From IMG/VR virus record IMGVR_UViG_3300028676_000003, positions 248,001-312,000 of that record: DNA of 64,000 nt, one strand, 5' to 3'. Position numbers and translations under genes: made by a program. The notes beneath the pieces were generated by a model. The model did no database searches. It was not told where the DNA came from and was given only the letters and a program-made list of their open reading frames with translations. Shown here one piece after another: positions 20,482 through 55,409 of this stretch. Positions within the stretch are counted from its first letter, which is position 1. Every line of letters starts with the position of its first letter.

Positions 20482-20558
20482 AATACAAAGATACGAAGAA
20501 ATACCTGGTAGGTCAAGTAGTATCGAATAAAAAATTTAAAAAATAATTACAAAAAAGC

Positions 20559-20590
20559 TTGACTTATAAGAAAAAAGTTAGTACCTTTGT
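20559..20590 (+). promoter_or_regulatory. Bacteroidota sigma70-type promoter (TTG-N20-TACCTTTG) driving tRNA array 1
   Basis: TTG at 20559 and TACCTTTGT at 20582. The same 23-nt offset recurs at 29464/29487, 49350/49373 and 50543/50566, and about 25 TAcctTTGt copies precede genes across the window. Confidence 0.8.
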
Positions 20591-20642
20591 ATAACATTTA
20601 GAAATAAGTGTATATTTATAAACAAACAATAAACTAAAAATT

Positions 20643-20717
20643 ATGAAAACTTTAGCAAGCTTATTAGTCATTTTATTATGTTCACTAGTCGTGAACAGGG
20701 TGGGTTATGCCTGTTAA
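20643..20717 (+). CDS. leader peptide 1 (MKTLASLLVILLCSLVVNRVGYAC), Leu/Val/Cys-rich attenuator
   Basis: 24-aa ORF between promoter and terminator; 12 of 24 residues are L, V or C. Confidence 0.8.
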   Translation: MKTLASLLVILLCSLVVNRVGYAC

Positions 20718-20744
20718 GTAGAGTTATTTTTACTTAAACAATAT

Positions 20745-20781
20745 AATCCCATCTATTAAAATTAGATGGGATTTTTTTTTT
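20745..20781 (+). terminator. intrinsic terminator/attenuator of array 1
   Basis: AATCCCATCTA-loop-TAGATGGGATT plus T-run. Leader segment GGGTGGGTTAT (20698-20708) can pair with the 5' arm. Confidence 0.85.
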
Positions 20782-29435: not shown

Positions 29436-29463
29436 AATAATTTAAAAATAATCATTAAAAAAC

Positions 29464-29495
29464 TTGACTTATGTACTAACTTTTAGTACCTTTGT
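29464..29495 (+). promoter_or_regulatory. promoter upstream of leader 2
   Basis: TTGACT ... TACCTTTGT, followed by ATATTTAT at 29498. Confidence 0.8.
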
Positions 29496-29530
29496 ATATA
29501 TTTATTAAACAAACGAATAAACACAATATT

Positions 29531-29614
29531 ATGAGAACACTTACAAACATATTTGATTTTGCATTTACAGCAGCCGAAGAGGATTACTCTTGGGAAGGTC
29601 AACTAGTGTCGTAA
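29531..29614 (+). CDS. leader peptide 2 (MRTLTNIFDFAFTAAEEDYSWEGQLVS), Phe/Asp/Ala/Glu-rich attenuator
   Basis: 27-aa ORF; codons 8-18 (FDFAFTAAEED) are 10/11 F, D, A or E. Confidence 0.8.
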   Translation: MRTLTNIFDFAFTAAEEDYSWEGQLVS

Positions 29615-29640
29615 GTTAAGTAATATTAACAATACAATCA

Positions 29641-29674
29641 AGAGTCTGACCATAAAACGTCAGACTTTTTTTTT
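29641..29674 (+). terminator. intrinsic terminator/attenuator of array 2
   Basis: AGTCTGAC-loop-GTCAGACT plus T-run. Leader segment GGTCAACT (29597-29604) can pair with the 5' arm. Confidence 0.8.
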
Positions 29675-30836: not shown

Positions 30837-30909
30837 GGTCTATTCGTCTAGTCGGTCAGGACGTGCCCCTTTCACGGGTAAAACACGGGTTCGAATCCCG
30901 TATAGACTA
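30837..30909 (+). tRNA. tRNA-Glu(TTC)
   Basis: TGCCC-CTTTCAC-GGGTA. Confidence 0.9.
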
Positions 30910-30911
30910 CT

Positions 30912-31059
30912 GGGAATGTACGTTCAGCGGTCCGATTGGCTCTTAGGAGATGGTTTAAAACAATTGGGAAGTGTGTCAAGAAATTGATTGGGTAAAAACA
31001 CTATCAGAACGACTCCCGTGAAGGGGAGAAAGTCGCAGGTTCGAATCCTGTCGTTCCTA
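30912..31059 (+). ncRNA. tRNA-like RNA with an ~80-nt D-loop and a 6-nt anticodon loop
   Basis: GGGAATG/CGTTCCT acceptor, CGTTC/GAACG D stem, CTCCC-GTGAAG-GGGAG, T arm TTCGAAT. Confidence 0.6.
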
Positions 31060-31129
31060 CTATGAAGTACCTACGGCAATAGGTATAACAGAGCCAACGA
31101 ATTTGAATTGCCGTTTGAAGGTGTTGGTA

Positions 31130-31200
31130 GAAGCGTTCGTCTAGTGGACCAGGACACAGCCAATGGGGCTGAAACACAGGTTCGAGTCCTGTACGCTTTG
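31130..31200 (+). ncRNA. Glu-type tRNA body with a 5-nt anticodon loop
   Basis: GAAGCGT/ACGCTTT, D arm GTCTAGTGGACCAGGAC, CAGCC-AATGG-GGCTG. Confidence 0.65.
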
Positions 31201-31290
31201 CAATTAAGAGCACGTGGAAGTACGATAGCCCCCACAGTATAGAAAAAAACTAAGGTATCGTTGACTTCATGGTGGAAAGAAACCATATTT

Positions 31291-31362
31291 GGTCCTATCG
31301 TCTAGGGGTCAGGACACTAGGTTTTCAGCCTATAAACGAGGGTTCGATTCCCTCTAGGACTA
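31291..31362 (+). tRNA. tRNA-Glu(TTC)
   Basis: CTAGG-TTTTCAG-CCTAT. Confidence 0.85.
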
Positions 31363-31364
31363 CA

Positions 31365-31420
31365 AGAGACTGTTACTAATTTATAGGACTCCGAGTGAGG
31401 GGAAGCGTAGAATTAGAATT
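31365..31420 (+). repeat. inter-tRNA motif, copy 1 (AGACTGTT..TAATTYATAG...GCGTAGAATTA)
   Basis: Further copies at 52482-52545 and 52826-52881. Confidence 0.75.
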
Positions 31421-31423
31421 TTT

Positions 31424-31496
31424 GGAGCAGAGGTGTTGATGGTAACATACTCCCCTGTCACGGGATAGATTGAGGGTTCGACTCCCTTGTGCTCCG
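31424..31496 (+). tRNA. tRNA-Asp(GTC)
   Basis: CTCCC-CTGTCAC-GGGAT. Confidence 0.85.
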
Positions 31497-31652
31497 CAAG
31501 TCTATTAGGGTCGGCTGGAGACAAAGAGACTAAAATCATAAGGGTTCTAGTAGGGGTTGTGAACCGTATAATGACACATGACGTTGGGAAGTATAGCCAA
31601 AATGACACTCGGAAAGACGAAGGTTTGATGTTGAACCATATCAACATAATTC

Positions 31653-31725
31653 GGATGTGAGGTCAAATGGTTAAGATATCACCCTGTCACGGTGTTTGGA
31701 GCGGGTTCGAATCCCGTCACATCCG
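31653..31725 (+). tRNA. tRNA-Asp(GTC)
   Basis: Loop CTGTCAC, acceptor GGATGTG/CACATCC. Confidence 0.85.
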
Positions 31726-31731
31726 CAAATT

Positions 31732-31862
31732 GGAAATGTTACCCCAAAGCATGAGATTAATCAGAATGCGAGTCTATCAATGATAACGAAACCTTGATAG
31801 ATTTAGGAATAAGGGTACCTCTAATGGGATTTCGTTTGCAGGTTCGAGTCCTGCCATTTCCG
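31732..31862 (+). ncRNA. tRNA-like RNA with an expanded interior
   Basis: Perfect acceptor GGAAATG/CATTTCC and T arm GCAGG-TTCGAGT-CCTGC, with about 100 nt between and no clean anticodon arm. Confidence 0.55.
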
Positions 31863-31944
31863 CAATAATGTAACAAAAAAAATTGAGTTATGAAAACAAT
31901 GCGTAAATTCAGTCTCTTCTAAGGTCAAATCCTTACAAGAGAAA

Positions 31945-32646
31945 ATGAGTAAAAACACAAAAAAAGAAAGTTATAAGCCTTTTATTAAGCTTATTAACGA
32001 AAGAGCTAAAATTTGGAAGCTTATCGATGATTTAGGTTACATCGAGTTAGAAGAACCTATTCATCACGGTTACGATTCGTTTTTCGTATTAAGAGACGAT
32101 ATTTCAAGAAGAAAAGATGCTCCTTTATTAGAAGATTTGTTAAAGAATTATACTAGTGTTGCATGGTGTAGAAATAAAGACTTCATTGTCAAAAGAAGAG
32201 GTAAGAAAGAAAAAATTGAACCTAGTCTTGTTCACGTAAGTGTAGCGGCATATTTGTTATTTTCACCAAAGAAACAAGAGTTCTTTACCAAGCACTTCAT
32301 TAGAGGTTGGCATAGTGTTCGAGAAGTATATTGTCTTAATTTACCAAGACACTATTACGTAATCAAAAAGAAAAAAAGTTACATTACACATAGAAAGGTA
32401 ATGGATGCTCAATTGCAAAGTGACTTGGACTTGGTTTATGACCAAATCAACGAAATCACAGAAGTTTCAAACCCTTATAACAATCCTTGTGGTTGGGATG
32501 TAAGATTTTGGAACAAGGCTTCAAGAAGAAAAGATAATGTTATAACTAGCAATATCAAAAACCACTTCGATGGAGAACTTGATAGTGATTTATTAGAATA
32601 TGGTCTTTCTGAGAAAGCAAGACATGGAGCAAATTGGTATCGATAA
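31945..32646 (+). CDS. basic hypothetical protein
   Basis: 233-aa K/R-rich ORF. Confidence 0.65.
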   Translation: MSKNTKKESYKPFIKLINERAKIWKLIDDLGYIELEEPIHHGYDSFFVLRDDISRRKDAPLLEDLLKNYTSVAWCRNKDFIVKRRGKKEKIEPSLVHVSVAAYLLFSPKKQEFFTKHFIRGWHSVREVYCLNLPRHYYVIKKKKSYITHRKVMDAQLQSDLDLVYDQINEITEVSNPYNNPCGWDVRFWNKASRRKDNVITSNIKNHFDGELDSDLLEYGLSEKARHGANWYR

Positions 32647-32863
32647 AATACAGAAATGGTTAACGATGTGACCTCTATTTATAAGTCATGTTGTTGCCAT
32701 ATGTAACAAAATTTAGATAATAACTCGGAGACGAGCATGCGAAAGGTACCCACAGAGGGTCTAAGTCCGATTGATACGATACATAAGAACAGTTTCATAG
32801 GTTCCCAGCTGAATAAGGTAAGAGGGTATAAAATCATATCGTTCAAAATCTAAATTTTTTAAT

Positions 32864-32935
32864 GGCCCGTTCGTCTAGGGGTTAGGACGACTGGTTTTCG
32901 ACCAGTAAACAGGGGTTCGATTCCCCTACGGGCTG
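32864..32935 (+). tRNA. tRNA-Glu(TTC)
   Basis: ACTGG-TTTTCGA-CCAGT. Confidence 0.9.
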
Positions 32936-33034
32936 CAATAATTGGTTGACGAAAATACTCTTGCTGGAACAAGGGTAGAAGTAGTTGGATATTATATATT
33001 TGAAGCAAGGATTCCAGTCTGAGCGGAGAGTATC

Positions 33035-33105
33035 TTGGTACTAGTTTAATTGGAAAAAACGGGTGCGCTGAGCATTTAATATGGGTTCGAGTCCCATGTA
33101 TCGAA
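33035..33105 (+). ncRNA. tRNA-like RNA with a 5-nt anticodon loop
   Basis: TTGGTAC/GTATCGA, D stem GTTT/AAAC, GGTGC-GCTGA-GCATT, T arm ATGGG-TTCGAGT-CCCAT. Confidence 0.6.
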
Positions 33106-33334
33106 CTAATTTCAACTGAAGATAAATGTAAGTATCGTGCTTAATAACCACGGAAACCTTGGTGAGGGGTCCATAGTCATCACTTATATCATTGCTAAGA
33201 ATGAGTATTTATTGTAAGATATTTAAAACATCATTTATTCGGCCAATGTGGTTGATTTATAAGTGATTAAATAGGGTGTAGAGACGTTTGATGCTCTACT
33301 AGGTATTCCACTTAGAAATGGATTGAAATTTTAA

Positions 33335-33408
33335 GGGGTCTTAGCTCAGCTGGCTAGAGCATCTGCCTTGCACGTAGAAGGTCGTGGGTTCGACTCCCAC
33401 AGGCTCCA
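33335..33408 (+). tRNA. tRNA-Ala(TGC)
   Basis: TCTGC-CTTGCAC-GTAGA, G3:U70. Confidence 0.9.
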
Positions 33409-33533
33409 CAAAGTTAACAAATACAAAAGTTCCCGAACGGTAGTAGGGCTTAGGTGAAGCGGAGTTCGAAACTCCAAATGAATCTGTTCGACTCAGGCTC
33501 GTGCTTGGTGTGCAAGAAACTAAGTTTGTTAAT

Positions 33534-33618
33534 GGGAGTGTAGCTCAGTTGGTAGAGCAGGATGTATAGGAATGCATACTTTAAATCTGTGTCAATGGTT
33601 CGATTCCATTCACTCTTA
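33534..33618 (+). ncRNA. tRNA-like RNA with an enlarged anticodon arm
   Basis: Canonical D arm (AGCTCAGTTGGTAGAGC) and T arm; about 20 nt in the anticodon-loop position. Confidence 0.6.
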
Positions 33619-33627
33619 CAAAATATT

Positions 33628-33700
33628 GGGGAAGTAGCTCAACTGGCTGAGCGTTACCTTTGCAAGGTAAAGGATGCGGGTTCGAATCCCGTCTTCTCCA
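33628..33700 (+). tRNA. tRNA-Ala(TGC)
   Basis: TTACC-TTTGCAA-GGTAA, G3:U70. Confidence 0.9.
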
Positions 33701-34104
33701 CTAAAAGTTTTAAAGATGGCAAAAACCGTTATAGATAAAGCGAAAGAGCTTATCGAAGAAGTAGGAAAAGAAAAAGCAATTGAGTATTTTCAGAAAAGAA
33801 TCAGTGATATCGGAGAACCTAAATCATTTGAGGATATTTGTATGATAACGGGTAACAAAACGGCCATAGCCTATATTAATGGCGAAATTAAATCAAAAAA
33901 GAAATAAAATGTTAGGAGTAGTAATTGAAGTTGTTGAAGGACCATTGAAACATACTAATGGTTATTCTGTTAAGGTTAAGGCAATGAATCCTGATGGAAA
34001 GGTATTTGATTACCAATTCATTAAGAATCATAAAGCTGATGCAGAGATTATAATTCCTGGTTGGAGTTGGGAAATGAAGTTTAAACGTAAAAATTGGATA
34101 TAAG

Positions 34105-34902
34105 ATGAGAACAAGAGTAGCACCGTCACCAACTGGAATTTTCCATTTGGGAACACTTAGAACAGCATTATTAAACTATTTACTGGCTAAGGCAAACGGT
34201 GGTGATTTCATTCTCCGTATTGATGATACCGATGTAGTTAGAAATGATGATAAATACATAGATTATATCTATGACCAAATGAAACACTTTGGCCTTAATC
34301 ATGACCTAACGTTTAAACAGTCAGATAGACTAGCACGATATGCAGAAGTTGCCAATAAGATTGGTTTTGCTTCACCTGATGGAATAAAGTTGAATATGGG
34401 TGACTATGATATGGTTATTCTTAGAACAAATGGATATCCAACATATAACTTTGCAAGTATTCTTGATGATTATGACTACGATATCACTGATTTTGTCAGA
34501 GGTGTAGACCACATCAACAATCTAGATAAACAAAAACATATTTGGGACTTGATTGCAAGTGTTTATGGTGATAAGCCTTTTCCAAATGTAATTCATGCTG
34601 GATTGTTATTTGATGGGAAGAGTAAGTTATCGAAAAGAAGCGGAAACGGAACGACAGCTGACTATGTTGACTTTGATAAGGATGCATTATTAAATTGGTT
34701 GTTTAAGATGGGTTGGTCTCATAAGGACCCGAATTTCGATAGAGATTTTCCTTTTTTACTGATGATTCAAATGATTGCTTTCTTTAATGATGGTAATATC
34801 ACGAAATCTAACTGTAAGATTGATAGACCAAAGCTTGATTTTTTGAATAAAAAACATAAAAACTTTAAGAAATTCAAAGAAAGTTTTGGTGAATTCAAAT
34901 AA
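34105..34902 (+). CDS. glutamyl-tRNA-synthetase-family catalytic domain only (GluRS/GluQ-like)
   Basis: RTRVAPSPTG.FHLGTLR, LRIDDTD, PTYNFA..DD..ITD.VRG.DH, KLSKR. 265 aa with no anticodon-binding domain. Confidence 0.85.
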   Translation: MRTRVAPSPTGIFHLGTLRTALLNYLLAKANGGDFILRIDDTDVVRNDDKYIDYIYDQMKHFGLNHDLTFKQSDRLARYAEVANKIGFASPDGIKLNMGDYDMVILRTNGYPTYNFASILDDYDYDITDFVRGVDHINNLDKQKHIWDLIASVYGDKPFPNVIHAGLLFDGKSKLSKRSGNGTTADYVDFDKDALLNWLFKMGWSHKDPNFDRDFPFLLMIQMIAFFNDGNITKSNCKIDRPKLDFLNKKHKNFKKFKESFGEFK

Positions 34903-36357: not shown

Positions 36358-36847
36358 ATTAGTTGTACCTTTGTAATGTAATAAAAATTAAACTATGAGA
36401 AATTTAAAAAAGCGATTTTTTCAATATTTGGCCGATTATATAATCGAGAGGTTACGATTCGAGTTGAATAGTCAATTCTATAATGAGAAGGTTTTTTACT
36501 TCTATTTAGAAATGGGAATATGTTTAGATTTTTATTGTACGGAGTATTTTAACGTAGAATTAGACTAAAAAAAAAATAAGTTTTAGTTGCAAGTTAAAAA
36601 AACGTTTCGTACCTTTGTTAAAGAAAAAGAAATTAGGTTAGGTTAGGTTAATAAATTTTGGTTTTTGGTTTTGAATTGCGTTTGTCACAAGTAAATGTTA
36701 ATTGATTTCGGTAAGATTAGCATTCGTCATGCTTGTGACGTTTTTAGATTGAATTAGGTTAAACTCGTTAGTTCTATTAGGGCCTGTCGTCATGGCAGAT
36801 AATCATAGGGAATTACGTCAGAACGTCCTACAGACGTAACTAACACT

Positions 36848-36919
36848 GGAGATGTAGCTCAGTTGGTAGAGCGGCCCCTCAAACGGGGTGTGTCGCAGGT
36901 TCGAACCCTGCCGTCTCCA
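36848..36919 (+). ncRNA. tRNA with a 6-nt anticodon loop
   Basis: Canonical body, GCCCC-TCAAAC-GGGGT. Confidence 0.7.
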
Positions 36920-38731: not shown

Positions 38732-38850
38732 ATAGTAGTCGTCTAGTGGACAAAGACACCGCCCCTGTATTCGTGTATGAGGTTCGACTCCTCTTTAGCA
38801 GTGGTGGTATGACGTAGGTGGAAACATTGGTTCAAATCCAATCTGCTGTA
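38732..38850 (+). ncRNA. Glu/Asp-type tRNA body with an ~50-nt insertion in the anticodon loop
   Basis: ATAGTAG/CTGCTGT, D arm GTCTAGTGGACAAAGAC; the CCGCC/GGTGG stem encloses a second T-arm (GAGG-TTCGACT-CCTC). Confidence 0.6.
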
Positions 38851-39023: not shown

Positions 39024-39094
39024 ACTTCTGTCGTCTAAGTGTTAGGATGCCCTCGTTGTAGAGGGTGATAGTGGTTCAAATCCATTCGGAAGTG
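39024..39094 (+). ncRNA. Glu-type tRNA body with a 6-nt anticodon loop
   Basis: ACTTCTG/CGGAAGT, CCCTC-GTTGTA-GAGGG. Confidence 0.65.
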
Positions 39095-39240
39095 CAAATA
39101 CTGACCTCCACTTCAGTAATTATTTCGTTTTTTAGAGGTGGCTCCCTTTCCACAATTGTGGATATAACCAAAAATTGCTGTGGCAGACCACGGGCATCTG
39201 ATAGGTCAACTATCTATACAGGGGGCGAAACTAAATGTTT

Positions 39241-49098: not shown

Positions 49099-49315
49099 GG
49101 GGAATCGTTGTAAGGTAAGCATGTACTGTGGAGAACGGTATGCAATCAAGACGAGTATCAATAATAGGTGAGGATGGTGTACAACAGAGCCATTAACGAT
49201 TGATACTGGTGGAGATAGTTCAGAAGATACCTAAGAAATCACTGGTTAGCGCAATCAGAATGAACTAAGGGATGATATGGGTGAAAGCTTGGGGGTTCGA
49301 GTCCTTCATTCCCTA
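49099..49315 (+). ncRNA. ~215-nt RNA with a tRNA-like acceptor and T arm
   Basis: GGGGAAT/ATTCCCT-A and GGGGG-TTCGAGT-CCTTC, with a multi-hairpin interior. Confidence 0.55.
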
Positions 49316-49387
49316 CTAGAAAAAAAATAAAAAATAATTGGTAAAACACTTGACTTGTAAAGAAAATTGTCGTACCTTTGTAGTATA

Positions 49388-50195
49388 TTAATAAGATGTT
49401 GGTTCGCCCATGCTTTTTAACATAAGGCCGCTTATGGTCTTCAGGATAAACATAGTGATATGTAGAAAGCGATTTAGCGGAAGCAAGATTGCGTTGGGAA
49501 TTTATTACCAATCCGAGTAAGCGATGATAAACGCAGTGTTTATGTAAAGGCAACAAGAGACAAAATCTGTTGGAGTTGGAAGTAAACATTATAGCCCAAA
49601 TTTTGATTCATGGGTTATTGAGTACGAAAGTATAATAGAGGTTTATCAGGATTTGGTGAATAACTGTAAAAGGGGAATAAGCTGGGTCCAGTATTTAGAT
49701 TATGGTGTAGCTGAAAGGTGATATTAATCGAAGGTACCATGTTCGAGAGAGCATATCGGGGTGTCGTTAGCTGGGCTACTCAAAAGGTAGTACGTTAGCA
49801 AATCTGAGGACACATCCTGAACTGAAATGAATCGATGCAATTTATTTAGGTTTTTAACCTGAAATATCTTTTAAGAAAAGGAAATTTTATAAAAAGCAAA
49901 AGTTCCTCAGAACATGATTTGAAAAATGAGTTATACTGTTGTAAAATACAGTTGTTGCTAGGCCGCAAGCCAAAGTGACAAAATAAAGTAAGTAGTTCTA
50001 AGCTAATAGCCCGCAAGCTATGCAGACTCGCAAGGTCAGTCGGATGAAAATGGAGTTTATATAGAATCATGTAGTGATTGCAGAATCGTATATCTGTCTC
50101 ATTGTTGACTATTCCTGTAGCAATATAGGTGTGTGTAACAAACCGAAAGGTTTCAAAACGTCAACAGTATAGCTGAACACTCAGGCGACTACAAA
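49388..50195 (+). ncRNA. large structured ncRNA, GOLLD-like
   Basis: About 800 nt with no plausible + ORF and its own promoter (49350-49381). Many GNRA-capped hairpins (GCAA, GAAA) and a CTCAAAAGG element, next to tRNAs. Family assignment is from memory only. Confidence 0.55.
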
Positions 50196-50253
50196 ATTTT
50201 GGGGATAACCTTTAATCGGTTCATAAGGCGTAAAACCTTATATCCCCACACAT

Positions 50254-50326
50254 TCCGTGTTAGAGCAGTCAGGTAGCTCGCTCCCGTGTGAGGGAGAGGT
50301 CAGGGGTTCGAATCCTTTACACGGTA
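50254..50326 (+). ncRNA. initiator-like tRNA body with a 6-nt anticodon loop
   Basis: 1:72 mismatch, D stem GAGC/GCTC, CTCCC-GTGTGA-GGGAG. Confidence 0.65.
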
Positions 50327-50542
50327 CTAATTTTTACTAGACATATTAATTAAATTCGGGAGCAATACATATAGTATTGAATAGGTGGAAACCCTTATGC
50401 TCCCACTAGGCTTCGTAATTAGGAAATATGGATGCGGTTAAAAGAAACGACCAAAGATAAGGTTTCACGGCAAAAGGCTCTATTCGTTAACCAGCGAGCT
50501 TTTACTTATCTTTGGAAATTTCAAAAAAAAATGACAAAAGGC

Positions 50543-50574
50543 TTGCTTTTTACAAAAATAGTTAGTACCTTTGT
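50543..50574 (+). promoter_or_regulatory. promoter upstream of leader 3
   Basis: TTG ... TACCTTTGT; ATATTTAT at 50625. Confidence 0.8.
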
Positions 50575-50665
50575 ATAAGAAATAAAAAAATAAACAGAAA
50601 AACAAAACTTTTGCTAAAAGCAATATATTTATAATAAACGTAGAAATACACAACAAACAGAAATT

Positions 50666-50773
50666 ATGACAACAAGTACCACATATCAAACGCAAAAACA
50701 ACAACCTAAAGGCGGGAAGCCTTATGGCTTGGCTGGGTGTGTCAACAACTTGTTTGACTTAGTTACAATATAA
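50666..50773 (+). CDS. leader peptide 3 (MTTSTTYQTQKQQPKGGKPYGLAGCVNNLFDLVTI), Thr/Tyr/Gln/Lys/Pro/Gly-rich attenuator
   Basis: 35-aa ORF; codons 2-21 are 19/20 T, Y, Q, K, P or G. Confidence 0.85.
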   Translation: MTTSTTYQTQKQQPKGGKPYGLAGCVNNLFDLVTI

Positions 50774-50797
50774 TTAGTAGTAATACTGATTTTGTAG

Positions 50798-50832
50798 ACC
50801 CAGCTTAATGTAAAAATTAGGCTGGGTTTTTT
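50798..50832 (+). terminator. intrinsic terminator/attenuator of array 3
   Basis: ACCCAGCTTAAT-loop-ATTAGGCTGGGT plus T-run. The leader carries an identical GGCTGGGT at 50731-50738. Confidence 0.85.
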
Positions 50833-50837
50833 CATTT

Positions 50838-50910
50838 CGGGGGATAGCTTATATGGTAAAGCACTGACCGTTGGGGTCAGGAGAATGAGGTTCGAGTACT
50901 CATCTACCGA
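50838..50910 (+). tRNA. Pro-type tRNA body with an atypical anticodon loop (CGTTGGG)
   Basis: C1:G72, A73; CTGAC-CGTTGGG-GTCAG lacks U33. Confidence 0.6.
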
Positions 50911-51024
50911 CAAACACAAAACGGGTTAACCTCTGCGAACAGAAAGTACGAGGATGGAACAATTGGAAAGATATCGCTAGTTGCAAAGGGTTCGATTCCC
51001 TATAACCTGACAAAAGAATTAATC

Positions 51025-51315
51025 ATGAGTAAAGGAAATTGTGAATTATGTGAACGAGAGAAGGAATTGACCTTTCATCACCTAATACCTCAAATCAACC
51101 ACTCGAAGAATGCCTTTCAAAGGTTATTCAGTAAAGAGGATATGAAAACAAGAGGTCTTATGTTATGTAGAGAGTGTCATTCAATGATTCATCGAACGCT
51201 AGACAACAAAACACTCGGATTAGAGTACAATACAAAAGAATTATTACTCGGACATGAAGGAATCTTCAAGTTTGTAGAATGGGTTAAAAAACAAAACAAA
51301 AAAGTAAAAAAATAG
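51025..51315 (+). CDS. HNH-family protein
   Basis: CELC, TFHHLIP, LCRECHSMIH. Confidence 0.75.
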   Translation: MSKGNCELCEREKELTFHHLIPQINHSKNAFQRLFSKEDMKTRGLMLCRECHSMIHRTLDNKTLGLEYNTKELLLGHEGIFKFVEWVKKQNKKVKK

Positions 51316-51387
51316 AACAAATGAAAAATATTAAACGTATAAAGAATAAACAGTAACCACCTTCAAATCATGAGGGTGATATGATAT

Positions 51388-51458
51388 GCCCTCTAAGCTT
51401 TAAGGTGAAGCACGATACTTTTAATATCGGGAAAATGGTCCAATACCATTAGGGGGTA
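51388..51458 (+). tRNA. tRNA-Lys(TTT)
   Basis: CGATA-CTTTTAA-TATCG; divergent T loop. Confidence 0.75.
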
Positions 51459-51477
51459 CAAGTTTTAATAAACGAAT

Positions 51478-51550
51478 GCCCTCGAAACATTGCTGGCGAT
51501 GTACTCCGCTTTTAACGGAGGAATAATTGGTTCGATTCCAATCGGGGGTA
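51478..51550 (+). tRNA. tRNA-Lys(TTT)
   Basis: CTCCG-CTTTTAA-CGGAG. Confidence 0.85.
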
Positions 51551-51569
51551 CAAGACGAAAGTCGAATAC

Positions 51570-51644
51570 TCTCCTATGGCTGACTGGGTAAAGCACCATA
51601 CTTTTAATATGGCATCAATGTCGGTTCGAACCCGACTGGGAGAA
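51570..51644 (+). tRNA. tRNA-Lys(TTT)
   Basis: CCATA-CTTTTAA-TATGG. Confidence 0.85.
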
Positions 51645-51706
51645 CAAATTAAGTTTTTAACCTTTACTTTTGTTTAAAAGCGCATATTATTGTAATAAAA
51701 TTTATT

Positions 51707-52147
51707 ATGAAAATATGTGGAACATGTAAAGTACCGAAATCCGAAGAAGATTTCAACAAGAATAAAAGCAAACCAGATGGTTTAAATAGCATTTGTAGAG
51801 AATGTAGTAACAAACGGTCTAAACGATATTATACTGAGAATAAAGAACATCATATTGGTGTTATTAAAGATAGGAAGGTTAAAACATTAATCGATACTAG
51901 AACAAAAATTTTTGAGTATTTTAAAGAAAACCCGTGTATTGATTGTGGTGAAACAGACCCAATAGTACTAGAATTTGACCATCGAGACGATGTTATCAAA
52001 GAGAGAAATATTGCTGATTTAGTCGGAAATAGTTGTTCTTGGACGATGATTAAGAAAGAGATTGACAAGTGTGATGTAAGGTGTGCAAATTGCCACAGAA
52101 GAAGAACAGCAATCCAACAAGGTTGGTATAAAGGAGTTATATTATGA
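51707..52147 (+). CDS. HNH homing-endonuclease-like protein
   Basis: N-term CxxC Zn finger, CIDCG....LEFDH, KC...CANCHR. Confidence 0.8.
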   Translation: MKICGTCKVPKSEEDFNKNKSKPDGLNSICRECSNKRSKRYYTENKEHHIGVIKDRKVKTLIDTRTKIFEYFKENPCIDCGETDPIVLEFDHRDDVIKERNIADLVGNSCSWTMIKKEIDKCDVRCANCHRRRTAIQQGWYKGVIL

Positions 52148-52400
52148 CAGAACAAGAAAAGCACATAGCAGATAGTATGACATTATTTGCCGCTAACATA
52201 GCAGATTTTGAAGTAGGTGATTTAGTAAAAGAGGCGAATGGTATCGTGTCCAAGATAACGAACAAAACCATCAACTCTATTGAAGTGGAAATTGACAAGC
52301 TACCACTTAAAAAAAATGCGTCAAAAGAAAATATCGGGATTAAAGCAAGACAATGGTTTACCATGGAAAATTTTAATCGTAGATTTAAAAAGTAATTATT

Positions 52401-52476
52401 CGGGTGGTATAGGAGCCAGGTTTATCTAGTCGCACTTGGACTGCGAATCACGTGGGTTCGAATCCCACTCACCCGA
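52401..52476 (+). tRNA. tRNA-Pro(TGG)
   Basis: TCGCA-CTTGGAC-TGCGA. Confidence 0.85.
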
Positions 52477-52481
52477 CGAGA

Positions 52482-52545
52482 AGAGACTGTTATTAATTCA
52501 TAGAACACCATACTTAGTAAGTACTGGAAGCGTAGAATTAAAAAT
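52482..52545 (+). repeat. inter-tRNA motif, copy 2
   Basis: AGAGACTGTTATTAATTCATAG...GAAGCGTAGAATTAA. Confidence 0.75.
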
Positions 52546-52547
52546 TA

Positions 52548-52623
52548 CGAGATGTGGACTAATTGGCTAAGTCGCTTGCTTTGGGAGCAAGACATCGTGC
52601 AGGTTCGAGTCCTGTCATCTCGA
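52548..52623 (+). tRNA. tRNA-Pro(TGG)
   Basis: CTTGC-TTTGGGA-GCAAG. Confidence 0.9.
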
Positions 52624-52745
52624 CATACTGGGTTTTGATACCGATTTACCGTTAGGAAACGGAGCGTGAAGGGGTTCGTCAAACAAACTCTGCTCCCGAA
52701 ACAGAATTGAAGTGGGGTATGACGGATGCAGAGAGAGGCATATAT

Positions 52746-52817
52746 GCGGGAGTAGCTCAATGGTAGAGTTCCTGATTTCCAATCAGGTTGTTGCGAGTTC
52801 GAGCCTCGTCTTCCGCT
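52746..52817 (+). tRNA. tRNA-Gly(TCC)
   Basis: CCTGA-TTTCCAA-TCAGG. Confidence 0.9.
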
Positions 52818-52825
52818 CGAAGATA

Positions 52826-52881
52826 AGACTGTTGCTAATTCATAGGGTACCAAGGTAAAAACTGCGTAGAATTAGAAAATT
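52826..52881 (+). repeat. inter-tRNA motif, copy 3
   Basis: AAGACTGTTGCTAATTCATAG...TGCGTAGAATTAG. Confidence 0.75.
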
Positions 52882-52955
52882 GCGACCATCGCCTAGTTGG
52901 TATGGCATCTGACTTCCAATCAGAAATAGGGCGGGTTCGAGACCCGCTGGTCGCT
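52882..52955 (+). tRNA. tRNA-Gly(TCC)
   Basis: TCTGA-CTTCCAA-TCAGA. Confidence 0.9.
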
Positions 52956-52963
52956 CAAAATAT

Positions 52964-53038
52964 TGGCCTATGGTGTAATTGGCAACACTACTGTTTTTGG
53001 TGCAGTCATTCAAGGTTCGAGTCCTTGTGGGCCAACCA
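52964..53038 (+). tRNA. tRNA-Gln(TTG)
   Basis: ACTGT-TTTTGGT-GCAGT, encoded CCA. Confidence 0.9.
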
Positions 53039-53042
53039 ATAT

Positions 53043-53113
53043 TGGGGATTGATGTAATGGTAGCATACTTGGTTTTGAGCCAAACTGTATAAGTTCGACC
53101 CTTATATCCCTAA
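53043..53113 (+). tRNA. tRNA-Gln(TTG)
   Basis: CTTGG-TTTTGAG-CCAAA. Confidence 0.8.
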
Positions 53114-53116
53114 CTA

Positions 53117-53188
53117 TGTCAAGTAGTTTAATTGAGAAAACTCCCTGCGTTGGGCGGGGCGATTTGGGTTTGAATCCCGATTTGACAG
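53117..53188 (+). tRNA. Gln-like tRNA with an atypical anticodon loop (CGTTGGG)
   Basis: TGTCAAG/TTTGACA-G; CCCTG-CGTTGGG-CGGGG. Confidence 0.55.
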
Positions 53189-53197
53189 CAAAGATAA

Positions 53198-53257
53198 AAA
53201 ATGATTTCAGCAAATATTATCATCAAACTTTTAATTTGAAACAGATATATCATTTTG
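53198..53257 (+). ncRNA. CAGCAA-stem element enclosing a Lys(TTT) anticodon arm
   Basis: AAAATGAT..CAGCAA ... TCAAA-CTTTTAA-TTTGA ... ATCATTTT-G. Confidence 0.6.
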
Positions 53258-53265
53258 TTCTTTTT

Positions 53266-53344
53266 GGGTCTATGGCAGAGCGGTCGATTGCGACAGACTG
53301 TAAATCTGTTATTCCACACCGTGGTTCGAATCCACGTGGGCCCA
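53266..53344 (+). tRNA. tRNA-Tyr(GTA)
   Basis: ACAGA-CTGTAAA-TCTGT. Confidence 0.9.
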
Positions 53345-53404
53345 CTGGCGAGTATGTTGTTTTATGATTTTCAGGAAAAGGCGTTAGAGAAAAAAATCAA
53401 ATTT

Positions 53405-53486
53405 GGGGTATCGCCAAAGTAGGAGAGTTGGGACGGTCTGTAACACCGTTGCGAAAGCTGAGTAGGTTCGATTCCTACATGCCTCA
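53405..53486 (+). tRNA. tRNA-Tyr(GTA)
   Basis: ACGGT-CTGTAAC-ACCGT with a variable arm. Confidence 0.85.
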
Positions 53487-53549
53487 CTGAGCAGTTGTGG
53501 TCTGCTTGCAATTAAATTCCACCGTTTGATTCACGTAACGAATCACTAT

Positions 53550-53622
53550 GCTTCCGTAGCTCAATTGGTGGAGCATCTCATTTGTAACGAGAAGGTCGCA
53601 GGTTCGAAGCCTGTCGGGAGCT
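53550..53622 (+). tRNA. tRNA-Thr(TGT)
   Basis: TCTCA-TTTGTAA-CGAGA. Confidence 0.85.
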
Positions 53623-53773
53623 CAATAAGCAGGATATCGTAAGAAACGTCCACATAGGTTAATTACCTGTTGAAGAAAGGATAAAGACAGGGGCTCCTTT
53701 TAAGTCCTGCTGACGTTATTAAAAATCGTTGCACGTAGCGAACCAACCTAGTTATACGATTCTAGGTAAAATT

Positions 53774-53846
53774 GCCGATGTAGCTCAGTAGGTAGAGTAC
53801 CTGTTTTGTAAACAGATTGTCGCAGGTTCGATTCCTGTCATCGGCT
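53774..53846 (+). tRNA. tRNA-Thr(TGT)
   Basis: CCTGT-TTTGTAA-ACAGA. Confidence 0.9.
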
Positions 53847-54451
53847 CAAACATAAAAAAAAATTGATATGAAAGGACTTAAATTTATTCCACTAGTAGAA
53901 GTAAGTGAGGAAACCAAGGCTAAATTGGACCTTATGATGAAGAAAAGAGATGAGCGAATTCAATCAATGATTGATGATTATCGAAATGGTAGATTTGCAG
54001 AAGAAATGAAAAACCTGCCAAAAAATTAGGTTATTAAAAAGTTTATTTGTACCTTTGTAAGGTAATAATTAAACCGAACAAAATGACAAGAGAAGATTTT
54101 AGAATTGTACAAAAGTATTATGCAACTAGTAGCCTAGTTATGATTTTTTATGGTAGTGTTATCATTGAAAGTGTTGAAATCTATAAGAATTATTCAACGT
54201 TTGAAGATGAAGCAGACAAAGCGGCTAGACTAGCTGAGATGGGTAAAGAAGGTGGTAAAAAAGCTAAGCCAAAACCAATCAAGATGAAGTCTAAAAAAGA
54301 CGACCGTACCAAAGATGAAATTAGTGCTGAATGTGAGAGCAAAATCAAAAAATACATTGCGGCTAATAGCCAAAAATAAAAAACCGCTGGCGAAAGCCGA
54401 AGTGGCGTAATGATATCAGTCACGAGATGGTAAGCGGTGCCATCTCAAAAT

Positions 54452-54524
54452 GCGAGTGTAGCTCAGTTGGCAGAGCACCTGATTACCAATTAGGTTGTCG
54501 TGGGTTCGAATCCCATCACTCGCT
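54452..54524 (+). tRNA. tRNA-Gly(ACC), A34
   Basis: GCG-start, U73 Gly body; CCTGA-TTACCAA-TTAGG. Confidence 0.85.
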
Positions 54525-54562
54525 CTCTTGACTTTTTGGTACCATCTAGTATATTTATATAC

Positions 54563-55219
54563 ATGGGAAGAAAAGTAAAAAATATACATTACATTTATAA
54601 AATAACGTGTAATGTGACAGGAAGGTATTATGTAGGAATGCGTAGTACTTGTAAAGAAGATGATAATTACATGGGTTCAGGAAAAGTTCTCAGATATTCA
54701 ATACGAAAGTATGGTGTTGAAAACCATACAAAAGAAATTCTGAGTTATCATGAAACACGTGAGTTATTAGTTGAAGCTGAGATATTAGCTATTACTGCTG
54801 ATATGATTACAGATAAGAACTGTATGAATATTAGATTAGGTGGTTCAGGTGGTTTCACAAGTGAAGAAGCGAAAAAAGGTAGACTAGCGACAGATAAGAT
54901 TTTATTTGAAAAATTTGGTGATGATTTTAGAATAATAATAAACCAAAATTATCATAATAATATGTCTGAAACTGAAAAAATTGCTTTTAGTAATAAAGTA
55001 AAAGTTGGTCAACAAAGTAATGGCTATAATAATATAACTTTCAAGAATAAAAGGCATTCAGATAAAACAAAACAATTAATGTCTAAACCAAAAAATATTG
55101 GTGAAACAAATTCACAATTCGGAACTTGTTGGATAACTAAGGAAGGCATTAATAAGAAGATTAAGAAAGAAGACCTTGATACATTTATCACTGATGGATG
55201 GGTTCAAGGAAGAAAATAA
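54563..55219 (+). CDS. GIY-YIG homing endonuclease (Seg-like, NUMOD3-type tail)
   Basis: YIYKIT..VTGRYYVG, YMGSG, E, N.R.GG.GG, KRHSDKTK.LMS, WV.GR. Confidence 0.85.
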   Translation: MGRKVKNIHYIYKITCNVTGRYYVGMRSTCKEDDNYMGSGKVLRYSIRKYGVENHTKEILSYHETRELLVEAEILAITADMITDKNCMNIRLGGSGGFTSEEAKKGRLATDKILFEKFGDDFRIIINQNYHNNMSETEKIAFSNKVKVGQQSNGYNNITFKNKRHSDKTKQLMSKPKNIGETNSQFGTCWITKEGINKKIKKEDLDTFITDGWVQGRK

Positions 55220-55224
55220 CATAA

Positions 55225-55345
55225 GGGGGTATTAAAATATTGGCAAACGGCATTCTGCAATTTAAAAAAGAATGATTACTGCAAAATTCAAAAAAACAAT
55301 CTGTAACATTGAAATTAATACGTGGTTCGATTCCCGTTGCCCCCA
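55225..55345 (+). ncRNA. Tyr(GTA)-like tRNA interrupted between the D and anticodon arms by a CTGCAA-stem element with its arms in reversed order
   Basis: GGGGGTA/TGCCCCC-A acceptor; insert CATTCTG...AGAATG.TTACTGCAA; CAAT-CTGTAAC-ATTG; T loop TTCGATT. Confidence 0.6.
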
Positions 55346-55356: not shown

Positions 55357-55409
55357 TAAAAATAACTCATCATTTATTTGGTGGGTTATTTTTTTTTGCA
55401 TACCTTTGT
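55357..55409 (+). terminator. terminator-promoter cassette closing array 3
   Basis: Near-identical to 39241-39292. Confidence 0.75.

What the first reader, a model, noticed from the sequence alone, without database searches (positions are those of the whole stretch)
50666..50832. Attenuator 3: a leader that lists six isotypes (T,Y,Q,K,P,G)
Codons 2-21 (TTSTTYQTQKQQPKGGKPYG) are 19/20 drawn from the six isotypes encoded from 50838 to 55345. Right after this block, GGCTGGGT exactly duplicates the terminator 3' arm, and the first tRNA starts a few bases after the T-run. This is the clearest of the three cases.
Basis: partly seen in the sequence, partly recalled or inferred. Interest (0 to 1): 0.88.

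Follow-up and report, generated by a model that had tools for sequence, protein, structure and literature searches.

The report
Leader-peptide attenuators controlling phage tRNA arrays
A giant phage from peat puts a short "test" reading frame and a switchable stop signal in front of each block of its tRNA genes, and the test frame is spelled with the same amino acids whose tRNAs lie downstream. The phage can probably sense a shortage of those tRNAs and make more of them, a kind of control not described before for tRNA genes.

Summary
The ORF 50666-50773 encodes MTTSTTYQTQKQQPKGGKPYG…, and 19 of codons 2-21 use only T, Y, Q, K, P or G. These are exactly the six isotypes of the 16 tRNA genes at 50838-54525. 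GGCTGGGT (50731-50738) repeats the terminator 3' arm (50820-50827). The T-run ends 5 nt before the first tRNA.

Chance is excluded. This is the only one of 248,202 stop-free 20-residue windows in the 368.5-kb phage genome to reach 19/20.

The genome has four such units, three of them in the window. Relatives with differently partitioned arrays carry matching leaders, for example QQQQQQQ before three tRNA-Gln genes and SKHSKSFKSFWSH before a Lys/Phe/Ser/Trp/His array. Ten of 11 leader types fit their own array best, and 0 of 200,000 permutations reach the observed fit.

The enrichment is specific to the reading frame and confined to codons 8-18. It ends where a stalled ribosome would begin to cover the antiterminator. 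Both the antiterminator and the terminator helices show compensatory changes across 15 orthologues.

Best reading: a trp-type, ribosome-mediated transcription attenuator, multivalent, that controls tRNA genes. No description was found in the searchable literature. Function has not been shown experimentally.

The parts
50542..50574 (+). Strong promoter of Bacteroidota type for unit I: -33 CTTGCTTT (50542-50549), 15-nt spacer, GTACCTTTGT containing the -7 motif TAnnTTTG (50566-50573)
   Evidence: The variant CTTGACTT-N15-GTACCTTTGT occurs six times in the genome. Four copies precede leader units. The other two precede a GOLLD-like RNA and an uncharacterised RNA stretch followed by a small Met/Pro/Met tRNA cluster. 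That TAnnTTTG is the Bacteroidota sigma-A -7 element is from general knowledge.
50625..50634 (+). ATATTTATAA, a second promoter-like motif 32 nt upstream of the leader ATG
   Evidence: ATATTTATWA occurs 36 times on the + strand. It lies 25-45 nt upstream of all four leader ATGs and of many phage genes, often just after a T-run. Its function is inferred.
50666..50773 (+). Leader ORF of 35 codons plus TAA: MTTSTTYQTQKQQPKGGKPYGLAGCVNNLFDLVTI
   Evidence: An ORF of 30-35 codons with an ATG start is kept in all 15 I-type orthologues, and indels in the listing block are multiples of three.
50669..50728 (+). Listing block, codons 2-21: 19 of 20 are T, Y, Q, K, P or G. This is the proposed sensing window.
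   Evidence: Over 42 distinct leaders, about 0.9 of residues at codons 8-18 belong to the array's isotypes. From region 2 onward the fraction is 0.28, which is background.
50671..50687 (+). Region 1: AACAAGT (50671-50677) and ACATATC (50681-50687). It pairs with region 2 and its 3' flank before region 3 is made.
   Evidence: ACATATC is invariant in 15 of 15 orthologues, and its partner GGTRTGT is present in 13 of 15. Because the segment is invariant, covariation could not be tested.
50731..50754 (+). Region 2: GGCTGGGT (50731-50738) is the antiterminator strand and pairs with 50798-50805. GGTGTGT (50736-50742) and ACTTGTT (50748-50754) pair with region 1.
   Evidence: in constrained folds the 5' arm pairs here unless a ribosome A site sits at about codons 19-29; duplex energy -15.1 against -9.2±2.1 for shuffles; 92.5% of cells paired, 4 of 8 pairs compensatory, 0 of 500 shuffles as high.
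50796..50809 (+). Region 3: 5' arm of the terminator hairpin, shared by the antiterminator and the terminator
50816..50832 (+). Region 4: 3' arm of the terminator (50816-50829) and the T-run (50827-50832)
   Evidence: 14 bp, loop of 6. (-19.9 kcal/mol). (95.8% of cells paired, 6 of 8 pairs compensatory).
50838..54525 (+). Regulated tRNA array: Gln, Lys x3, Pro x2, Gly x2, Gln x3, Tyr x2, Thr x2, Gly(ACC). HNH-like and other small ORFs are interspersed.
55358..55397 (+). Terminator-like hairpin plus T-run that probably ends the unit, after the GIY-YIG-like ORF 54500-55219
20558..20781 (+). Paralogous unit F: promoter 20558-20590, leader 20643-20717 (MKTLASLLVILLCSLVVNRVGYAC), region 2 at 20698-20706, terminator 20745-20781. 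It precedes the Cys/Val/Leu array 20790-23596.
   Evidence: (11/20, p = 4.8e-5)
29463..29674 (+). Paralogous unit G: promoter 29463-29495, leader 29531-29614 (MRTLTNIFDFAFTAAEEDYSWEGQLVS), region 2 at about 29598-29604, terminator 29642-29674. It lies upstream of two ORFs and the Phe/Glu/His/Asp/Gln/Ala array 30568-33701.
   Evidence: (10/20, p = 0.038). In relatives the terminator directly abuts tRNA-Phe. The antiterminator is weak in most G-type copies.

Best explanation
The finding is a ribosome-mediated (leader-peptide) transcription attenuator that gates a phage tRNA operon.

Transcription starts at a strong Bacteroidota-type promoter. A 35-codon leader is translated while RNA polymerase moves on.

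When supply is adequate: aminoacyl-tRNAs for Thr, Tyr, Gln, Lys, Pro and Gly are plentiful, and the ribosome runs through the listing block. Region 2 (GGCUGGGU and its flank) is then either covered by ribosomes or re-captured by region 1. Region 3 is left free to pair with region 4, and the hairpin plus U-run stops transcription 5 nt before the first tRNA.

When supply is short: if any listed aminoacyl-tRNA is scarce, the ribosome stalls with its A site somewhere in codons 2-18. This keeps region 1 away from region 2 without covering region 2. Region 2 pairs with region 3 as soon as region 3 emerges, the terminator cannot form, and polymerase reads into the 16 tRNA genes that supply exactly those isotypes.

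The product therefore feeds back on its own synthesis, a demand-driven tRNA homeostat. The genome has one unit for each block of isotypes.

What is shown: all sequence parts, their conservation, the match between leader and array, and the covariation of both helices.

What is inferred: that the leader is translated, the direction of the response, how a fast ribosome prevents 2:3 pairing, and the physiological trigger. Candidate triggers are loss of host tRNA during infection, tRNA-cleaving defences, and a codon-usage mismatch.
For: 1. Composition. 19/20, p = 4.8e-9, and unique among 248,202 genomic windows.

2. Four paralogous units with a strongly diagonal leader-by-array matrix: I 19/20, D 18/20, F 11/20, G 10/20.

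3. Co-variation across phages. The 38 related loci and the larger relatives G003-G006 carry the module. New array partitions have new leaders:
- QQQQQQQ or QQQQQ before Gln x3
- NLLHLLNLLL before Leu x6
- SKHSKSFKSFWSH before Lys/Phe/Ser/Trp/His
- NRNYIYNECNEDMNEEIYIIDDN before Met/Glu/Asp/Asn/Tyr/Cys/Ile…
- STNIWSSRWSRS before Ser/Arg/Trp
- SVHIIHIWEHLLEEV before His/Glu/Val/Trp/Leu; this leader is also in GenBank LR756500.1 at 118911-118985 on the minus strand

Ten of 11 leader types fit their own array best. The diagonal z-sum is 53.1 against 4.4±7.2 for permutations, and 0 of 200,000 permutations reach it.

4. Reading frame. The in-set fraction at codons 7-17 is 0.87 in frame, 0.19 in the other two frames and 0.30 after nucleotide shuffling.

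5. Position. The enrichment (about 0.9) spans codons 8-18 and falls to background (0.28) from region 2 onward. On average 95% of an array's isotypes are represented in its leader. An A site at codon 18 puts the ribosome's leading edge at about nt 65 of the ORF, and region 2 starts at nt 66.

6. Structure.
- Intrinsic terminators are present in all units.
- In the nascent RNA the 5' arm pairs with codons ~20-25 of the leader unless a ribosome sits there.
- The duplexes beat dinucleotide shuffles in the I, D and F types and in several new types.
- The three segments change together: GGCTGGGT/ACCCAGCT/GGCTGGGT against GACTGGGT/ACCCAGTT/GACTGGGT against TATCGGGT/ACCCGATT/CATCGGGT.
- Helix 2:3 has 4 of 8 compensatory pairs and helix 3:4 has 6 of 8. 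For both, 0 of 500 shuffles reach the observed covariation score.
- Before region 3 exists the minimum-energy fold is 1:2. With region 3 present, 2:3 (-33.9) beats 1:2 (-29.4). For the full transcript, terminator plus 1:2 (-49.3) beats the fold with 2:3 enforced (-38.7).

7. Orthologous leaders keep the composition while the sequence changes. Most substitutions stay within the set.
Against: - There is no experimental or transcript evidence. The only RNA-library data are two 151-nt contigs inside the array and one contig from a relative that spans the terminator. These cannot be told apart from contaminating DNA.
- Equilibrium folding of the untranslated RNA truncated before region 4 favours 2:3. 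The off state therefore depends on kinetics or on ribosome occupancy, which was not modelled.
- In I- and D-type leaders the stop codon lies 9-11 codons beyond region 2, so a ribosome waiting at the stop does not itself cover region 2.
- The 1:2 helix rests on invariance, not on covariation.
- G-type antiterminators are weak in most copies.
- Recently added tRNAs are not listed in the leaders: His in L031/L032, Ala in L033.
- Whether transcription and translation are coupled in the presumed Bacteroidota host is not known here.
- Stalling reports aminoacyl-tRNA. A shortage of tRNA cannot be told from a shortage of amino acid.
Confidence: 0.82

Rival explanations
1. The parts are the same but the variable sensed is amino-acid supply or charging, as in classical biosynthetic attenuators. 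On this reading the tRNA arrays, and the aaRS-like genes behind some of them, are switched on as a general starvation response. They would not be reporting loss of tRNA molecules.
For: The mechanism reads aminoacyl-tRNA, so it cannot tell the two causes apart. aaRS-like ORFs follow the F and G arrays. This recalls the leader-controlled pheST operon (general knowledge).
Against: Making more tRNA does not relieve a lack of amino acid. The regulated product is the tRNA of exactly the listed isotypes, down to isoacceptor codons: AGA and CGT with Arg(TCT) and Arg(ACG), and TCG and AGC/AGT with Ser(TGA) and Ser(GCT) in unit D. That precision fits feedback on tRNA supply better.
Confidence: 0.12
2. 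The sign is opposite. The default state is read-through through 2:3 pairing. A ribosome stalled over region 2 causes termination, so shortage would lower tRNA transcription or abundance would raise it.
For: In the RNA truncated before region 4, the untranslated minimum-energy fold already has 2:3. Ribosomes with the A site at codons ~19-29 abolish 2:3 in the constrained folds.
Against: The isotype-specific codons sit at positions 8-18, where a stalled ribosome leaves region 2 free. Codons 19-30, where a stall would cover region 2, are at background composition. Before region 3 is made, region 2 is held by region 1, as in trp-type attenuators. Shutting off the tRNA supply when it is short also makes little functional sense.
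Confidence: 0.04
3. The small ORFs encode functional peptides or are not translated at all. The hairpin plus T-run would then be an ordinary terminator or insulator in front of the tRNA genes, and the composition match would be incidental or a by-product of nucleotide bias.
For: F-type leaders look like hydrophobic signal or transmembrane peptides. The region is A-rich, which favours K/N/T/Q codons. All leaders share an N-terminal M-K/R-T/N prefix, which suggests common descent.
Against: The match is frame-specific, 0.87 against 0.19 out of frame and 0.30 after shuffling. It holds for 10 of 11 unrelated compositions, including acidic, aromatic, hydrophobic and poly-Q leaders. Peptide sequence drifts while composition is kept. 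A coding segment co-varies with the terminator arms.
Confidence: 0.02

Closest known systems
Classical leader-peptide transcription attenuators of amino-acid operons (trp, his, leu, pheA; the multivalent thr and ilvGMEDA leaders) in Enterobacteria
   Same: A short translated leader rich in regulatory codons. Four RNA segments form mutually exclusive 1:2, 2:3 and 3:4 helices. An intrinsic terminator lies just upstream of the regulated genes. A stalled ribosome frees region 2. Multivalent listing has precedents: Thr+Ile in thr and Ile+Leu+Val in ilv (general knowledge).
   Different: The regulated genes are tRNAs, not biosynthetic enzymes, so the sensed molecule is itself the product. Leaders list from one isotype up to 6-9, covering on average 95% of the array. 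The element is carried by a phage. The promoter type points to a Bacteroidota host. Several units partition the whole genetic code within one genome. In I- and D-type leaders the stop codon lies well beyond region 2.
pheST (phenylalanyl-tRNA synthetase) attenuator of E. coli
   Same: A leader-peptide attenuator that controls a component of the translation apparatus rather than a biosynthetic pathway (general knowledge). Here too, aaRS-like ORFs lie behind two of the arrays.
   Different: pheST has a single isotype and regulates a protein-coding operon. It contains no tRNA genes.
T-box riboswitches
   Same: They are transcription antitermination switches that respond to the state of a specific tRNA, and they regulate translation-related genes.
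   Different: T-boxes bind uncharged tRNA directly through a specifier codon and the T-box sequence, and no ribosome or ORF is involved. No T-box model matched here. One T-box reads one isotype.
Long tRNA arrays of bacteria, plasmids and phages (for example the Anabaena trn operon)
   Same: These are supernumerary tRNA gene arrays on mobile DNA that are induced when translation is impaired (PMC8421152).
   Different: The Anabaena operon is controlled by the protein repressor TrcR (PMC10272220). No leader-peptide attenuator was found for tRNA arrays in the literature searches.
Drug-sensing leader peptides (ermC/ermK, cat, bmrCD, msrD)
   Same: A ribosome stalled on a short leader remodels downstream RNA, in some cases a transcription terminator.
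   Different: In those systems the stall is caused by an antibiotic together with the nascent peptide sequence. Here composition, not sequence, is conserved, and it tracks the downstream tRNA set.

Membership tests
Ribosome-mediated (leader-peptide) transcription attenuator | A short ORF with start and stop codons in the 5' leader of the regulated transcript | tested here: met
   ORF 50666-50773 lies about 85 nt downstream of the promoter. The ORF is kept in all 15 I-type orthologues and in 42 distinct leaders overall.
Ribosome-mediated (leader-peptide) transcription attenuator | Regulatory codons for the cognate amino acid(s) are concentrated in the leader | tested here: met
   19/20. Position-specific at codons 8-18. 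Frame-specific. Tracks array content across 11 leader types.
Ribosome-mediated (leader-peptide) transcription attenuator | A factor-independent terminator between the leader and the regulated genes | tested here: met
   A 14-bp hairpin at 50796-50829 followed by T6. The helix shows covariation.
Ribosome-mediated (leader-peptide) transcription attenuator | An antiterminator helix that excludes the terminator and uses a leader segment reachable by the ribosome | tested here: met
   50731-50738 pairs with 50798-50805. Across orthologues 92.5% of cells are paired, 4 of 8 pairs are compensatory and 0 of 500 shuffles score as high.
Ribosome-mediated (leader-peptide) transcription attenuator | An anti-antiterminator or pause helix (1:2) that holds region 2 when no ribosome is stalled | tested here: inconclusive
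   It is the minimum-energy fold before region 3 exists in all four units. ACATATC is invariant and GGTRTGT is present in 13 of 15 orthologues. No covariation test is possible, and 2:3 is 4.5 kcal/mol more stable at equilibrium.
Ribosome-mediated (leader-peptide) transcription attenuator | The leader is translated, and read-through rises when the cognate aminoacyl-tRNA is limiting | not testable with these tools
   Only contig-level RNA data were available, and they are not informative.
Ribosome-mediated (leader-peptide) transcription attenuator | The regulated genes are amino-acid biosynthesis or aaRS genes (the classical scope) | tested here: not met
   The downstream genes are 16 tRNAs plus homing-endonuclease-like ORFs. 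This is the point of novelty rather than a failure of the mechanism.
T-box riboswitch | A match to the T-box leader model (specifier loop, conserved T-box sequence) | tested here: not met
   RF00230 gave no hit at gathering threshold in the window, nor at E ≤ 1 in 49300-51050.

The most novel reading that the evidence does not exclude
These units are the first leader-peptide attenuators known to govern tRNA genes. Each acts as a multi-isotype decoding-speed sensor: its leader is written in the codons served by the tRNAs downstream. A giant phage can then restore, block by block, whichever tRNAs run short during infection, whether through host shut-off, anticodon nucleases or codon mismatch. 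This regulatory logic may also be what sorts the phage's tRNA genes into isotype blocks that co-evolve with their leaders.
Probability: 0.6. Interest if true: 0.93.

Novelty: new variant of a known kind. Interest (0 to 1): 0.9.

Why it matters
Why phages carry tRNAs, and how these are controlled, has been debated for decades. tRNA genes are normally thought to be regulated at promoters (growth-rate and stringent control) or, in one case, by a repressor.

A translated leader that enumerates the downstream isotypes would show three things:
- Phage tRNA supply is regulated by demand.
- The regulation is separate for each isotype group.
- The ribosome itself is the sensor.

It would also extend attenuation to an RNA product that feeds back directly on its own synthesis. 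It would point to transcription-translation coupling in Bacteroidota-type hosts. And it would explain the isotype-sorted layout of arrays in this clade of giant phages, which includes the published genome LR756500.1.

The leaders are also natural, compact and re-programmable sensors of the availability of specific tRNAs.

Tried and rejected
- Search of GenBank phages by DNA gave no match.
- Six literature searches, plus a text search of the huge-phage paper, found no prior description. Subscription-only papers are not covered.
- RNA evidence: two run searches and one read-laying run gave only a few contigs from metatranscriptomes, with no usable 3' ends.
- The leader is too short (35 aa) for the protein homology search.
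- The 42-kb region of LR756500.1 around the anchor protein has no tRNAs. Its arrays lie elsewhere, and one leader was then found.
- TAG or TGA recoding was considered because of a tRNA(CTA). It was rejected because coding density barely changes.
- Nucleotide-composition bias was rejected as the cause of the match by the frame and shuffle controls.
- A T-box or any other known riboswitch was rejected.
- Defining an array strictly as "up to the next attenuator" makes two nested leaders (L069 2209, L062 17339) fit worse than defining it as the whole downstream cluster. Those leaders list the whole cluster, so they are read as tandem, nested attenuators.

Full report
CONTEXT. The window is positions 248001-312000 of a 368,549-bp IMG/VR virus record. 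CheckV rates it 100% complete, and its GC content is 33.6%. It comes from peat metagenomes. Nearly all ORFs are on the + strand. ARAGORN finds 62 tRNA genes in the genome, 40 of them in the window. They are arranged in blocks sorted by isotype. Promoters have the form TTG-N19-21-TAnnTTTG (GTACCTTTGT occurs 34 times on the + strand). From general knowledge this is the Bacteroidota sigma-A type, so the host is probably a member of Bacteroidota. A related published genome is the 462-kb "huge phage" LR756500.1, whose 604-aa anchor protein is 69% identical.

THE OBSERVATION. All stated features are present at the stated coordinates.
- The ORF is 50666-50773 and encodes MTTSTTYQTQKQQPKGGKPYGLAGCVNNLFDLVTI.
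- 19 of codons 2-21 belong to {T,Y,Q,K,P,G}.
- The 16 tRNA genes from 50838 to 54525 encode exactly those six isotypes.
- GGCTGGGT lies at 50731-50738 and again at 50820-50827 in the 3' arm of a 14-bp hairpin (50796-50829), which is followed by T6 ending at 50832.
- The first tRNA starts at 50838.

The match is not chance. The binomial tail is 4.8e-9. Among 2,434 ATG-ORFs in six frames the runner-up scores 12/20. Among 248,202 stop-free 20-residue windows only this one reaches 19. Nineteen of the 20 codons can be read by anticodons present in the array, 16 of them under strict wobble rules.

PARALOGUES IN THE SAME GENOME. A variant of the strong promoter, CTTGACTT-N15-GTACCTTTGT, precedes four units of identical layout.
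- Unit D lies at genome 234285-234386, outside the window. Its leader is MNTINIHMISISNWRRNSHR…, and it precedes a Ser/Trp/Asn/His/Ile/Met/Arg array. The score is 18/20, p = 2e-8. Both Arg codon families (AGA, CGT) and both Ser families (TCG, AGC/AGT) match the two Arg and two Ser anticodon types in the array.
- Unit F lies at window 20643-20717. Its leader is MKTLASLLVILLCSLVV…, and it precedes a Cys/Val/Leu array. The score is 11/20, p = 4.8e-5.
- Unit G lies at window 29531-29614. Its leader contains …FDFAFTAAEED…, and it precedes a Phe/Glu/His/Asp/Gln/Ala array. The score is 10/20, p = 0.038.
- Unit I is the finding itself.

The leader-by-array matrix is strongly diagonal. Together the four arrays cover all 20 amino acids.

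RELATIVES. I used a 604-aa protein about 7 kb upstream as an anchor. This retrieved 38 loci from related giant-phage contigs, at 58-78% protein identity. A script then located hairpin-plus-T-run terminators with a short ATG-ORF ending 0-90 nt upstream and tRNAs downstream.

I-type leaders precede Pro/Gln/Tyr/Thr/Gly/Lys arrays in about 25 loci. Their peptide sequences drift but their composition is conserved. Examples are MKTTATYQTKQYQPKGGTPQG…, MKTTVTTYQPKQTQGGKPS… and MKKTTTYQYTGKPQGQGKQGP…. A DNA pattern built from the invariant part of the leader finds 18 IMG/VR stretches, six of them on contigs not seen before.

More distant relatives have different array partitions and correspondingly different leaders. 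These are G003 (501 kb), G004 (429 kb, which appears to be the same phage as LR756500.1: same tRNA tally and an identical leader), G005 and G006.

| Leader block | Downstream tRNA array |
|---|---|
| SKHSKSFKSFWSH | Lys, Phe, Ser, Trp, His |
| NRNYIYNECNEDMNEEIYIIDDN, then a second leader NCMNICNYCNINIINDDERMDY | Met, Met, then Glu, Asp, Asn, Tyr, Cys, Met, Ile… |
| QQQQQQQ and QQQQQ | three tRNA-Gln genes |
| NLLHLLNLLL | six tRNA-Leu genes |
| STNIWSSRWSRS | Ser, Arg, Trp |
| SVHIIHIWEHLLEEV | His, Glu, Val, Trp, Leu |
| SQRQLSLEQLIL | Leu, Arg, Glu, Ile, followed by a nested poly-Gln unit |

Taking one representative of each of 11 leader types, 10 fit their own array best. The diagonal z-sum is 53.1 against 4.4±7.2 for permuted assignments, and 0 of 200,000 permutations reach it.

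CONTROLS FOR TRANSLATION AND POSITION. These use 42 distinct leaders.
- The fraction of residues belonging to the downstream isotype set is 0.71 before region 2, against 0.27 expected. From region 2 onward it is 0.28, against 0.28 expected.
- By codon position, the fraction rises to about 0.9 at codons 8-18 and then falls.
- On average 95% of the isotypes in an array appear in its leader.
- For the same nucleotides, the fraction is 0.87 in frame, 0.19 in each of the other two frames and 0.30 after shuffling.

The signal is therefore a property of codons read in that frame, not of base composition.

RNA SWITCH. All four units of this genome end in canonical intrinsic terminators. I folded the nascent RNA without the 3' arm and masked a 28-nt ribosome footprint at successive codons. 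The terminator 5' arm then pairs with the leader segment just after the listing block (I 50731-50738, F 20698-20706, G 29598-29604, D genome 234345-234353). This pairing is lost when the A site is at about codon 19-27.

The best duplex between the 5' arm and the leader falls at codons ~20-25 in almost every unit. It beats dinucleotide shuffles in the I, D and F types and in several new types. G-type duplexes are weak.

In an alignment of 15 I-type elements the three segments change together:
- GGCTGGGT / ACCCAGCT / GGCTGGGT
- GACTGGGT / ACCCAGTT / GACTGGGT
- TATCGGGT / ACCCGATT / CATCGGGT
- GACTGGGC / GCCCAGTT / GACTGGGT

Helix 2:3 has 92.5% of cells paired and 4 of 8 pairs with changes on both sides. 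No shuffle (0 of 500) reaches the observed covariation score, and pairing collapses when the partner columns are slid. Helix 3:4 has 95.8% paired and 6 of 8 compensatory pairs.

A region 1 also exists. ACATATC (50681-50687) is invariant in all 15 orthologues although it encodes Thr-Tyr-Gln, which have synonymous alternatives. It can pair with GGTRTGT, which overlaps region 2. Before region 3 is transcribed, the minimum-energy fold of all four units closes the listing block in a long-range 1:2 helix.

For unit I the energies are:
- With region 3 present: 2:3 at -33.9 and 1:2 at -29.4 kcal/mol.
- Full transcript: terminator plus 1:2 at -49.3, and 2:3 enforced at -38.7 kcal/mol.

MECHANISM. This is the trp-type four-segment logic. 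A ribosome stalled with its A site in codons 2-18 keeps region 1 from region 2. It does so either by covering region 1 or by sitting inside the loop. It does not cover region 2: an A site at codon 18 puts the leading edge at about nt 65 of the ORF, and region 2 starts at nt 66. Region 2 then captures region 3, and polymerase reads into the array. A ribosome that is not delayed passes over region 2. Behind it region 2 is covered by trailing ribosomes or re-paired with region 1, so helix 3:4 forms and transcription ends 5 nt before the first tRNA.

The sensing window ends exactly where a stalled ribosome would begin to occlude region 2. This argues for stall meaning read-through, and against the opposite sign.

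The steps that are inferred rather than shown are translation of the leader, the direction of the response, the way the off state is reached, and the trigger. The off state is least clear in I- and D-type leaders, whose stop codon lies 9-11 codons beyond region 2. In F- and G-type leaders a ribosome at the stop codon covers region 2 directly. Because the ribosome reads aminoacyl-tRNA, lack of tRNA and lack of charging cannot be told apart from sequence alone. I favour tRNA supply, because the regulated products are exactly the listed tRNAs.

COMPARISON WITH KNOWN SYSTEMS. In mechanism the unit meets every sequence-level criterion of a leader-peptide attenuator (see the membership table). It differs in four ways:
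- Its target is tRNA genes.
- It lists many isotypes: six here, up to nine in relatives.
- It is carried by a phage.
- It occurs several times per genome, dividing the code among the units.

It is not a T-box. The one tRNA array whose regulation has been studied, in Anabaena, uses the repressor TrcR (PMC8421152, PMC10272220). Six full-text searches found no report of a leader-peptide attenuator upstream of tRNA genes, in phages or elsewhere. The huge-phage paper mentions neither attenuators nor leaders. I therefore rate this a new variant of a known kind, with high interest.

LIMITS. All evidence is computational. The RNA-library data are too thin to use. The literature library omits most subscription journals. 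The host is inferred from the promoter type only. The survey covers one phage clade.

Noticed in passing
window 49756-50187 (+); promoter 49349-49381; tRNA-like 50254-50327: A GOLLD-like giant RNA lies just upstream of the finding. The Rfam match to RF02032 is 95.6 bits, E = 2.8e-25, and covers the full model 1-416, but it is below the gathering score of 150. It is driven by the same strong promoter class as the tRNA units and is followed by a tRNA-like gene.
   Followed up: partly
window 23618-24886 and 34105-34902 (+): aaRS-like ORFs sit directly behind arrays of matching isotypes. A class-I Ile/Leu/Met/Val-type catalytic domain follows the Cys/Val/Leu array. A 265-aa Glu/Gln-type catalytic domain, about the size of GluQRS, follows the Phe/Glu/Asp/Gln/Ala array. 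The attenuators may therefore also control these ORFs.
   Followed up: partly
window 50625-50634, 20612-20621, 29498-29507; genome-wide: The motif ATATTTATWA lies 25-45 nt upstream of every leader ATG and of about 30 other phage genes, often right after a T-run. It is probably a second, phage-specific promoter class, which would give the tRNA units dual promoters.
   Followed up: partly
genome 223383-223757 (L004 311-685), outside the window: The phage encodes a tmRNA (RF00023, 66 bits, E = 8e-25).
   Followed up: no
window 33534-33619, 38732-38850, 39024-39095, 50254-50327; genome 228804-228879: Several tRNAs are unusual. Some have 8-nt anticodon loops (ARAGORN reports 'agga'; relatives have 'agac', 'ttcg', 'ttta' at the same array position). 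One is a 119-nt tRNA that looks intron-containing. One is a tRNA(CTA) suppressor, although reading TAG as sense barely raises coding density.
   Followed up: partly
window 51025-51315, 54500-55219, 22540-22950: HNH-like and GIY-YIG (SegE-like) homing-endonuclease ORFs lie inside the I array. A HAD domain of the 'Swiss army knife' RNA-repair proteins lies inside the F array.
   Followed up: no
window 36609-36850: This may be a degenerate fifth unit. There is a promoter (GTACCTTTGT at 36609) and a hairpin plus T-run, but only a TTG-start ORF (TTG GTT TTT GGT TTT GAA TTG CGT TTG…). It is rich in the codons read by the Leu(CAA) and Phe(GAA) tRNAs at 36848 and 37078.
   Followed up: no
window 50912-51020: The sequence after the first tRNA-Gln ends in a T-arm and acceptor-like GGTTCGATTCCC…ACCTGA, but no tool called it a tRNA. 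It may be a decayed or interrupted tRNA gene.
   Followed up: no
L069 2209-2325 and 2811-2903; L062 17339-17437 and 18747-18821: Two relatives have tandem or nested attenuators. A first leader lists every isotype of the downstream cluster. A second leader inside the cluster lists only the remainder, for example poly-Gln before the last three tRNA-Gln genes.
   Followed up: partly
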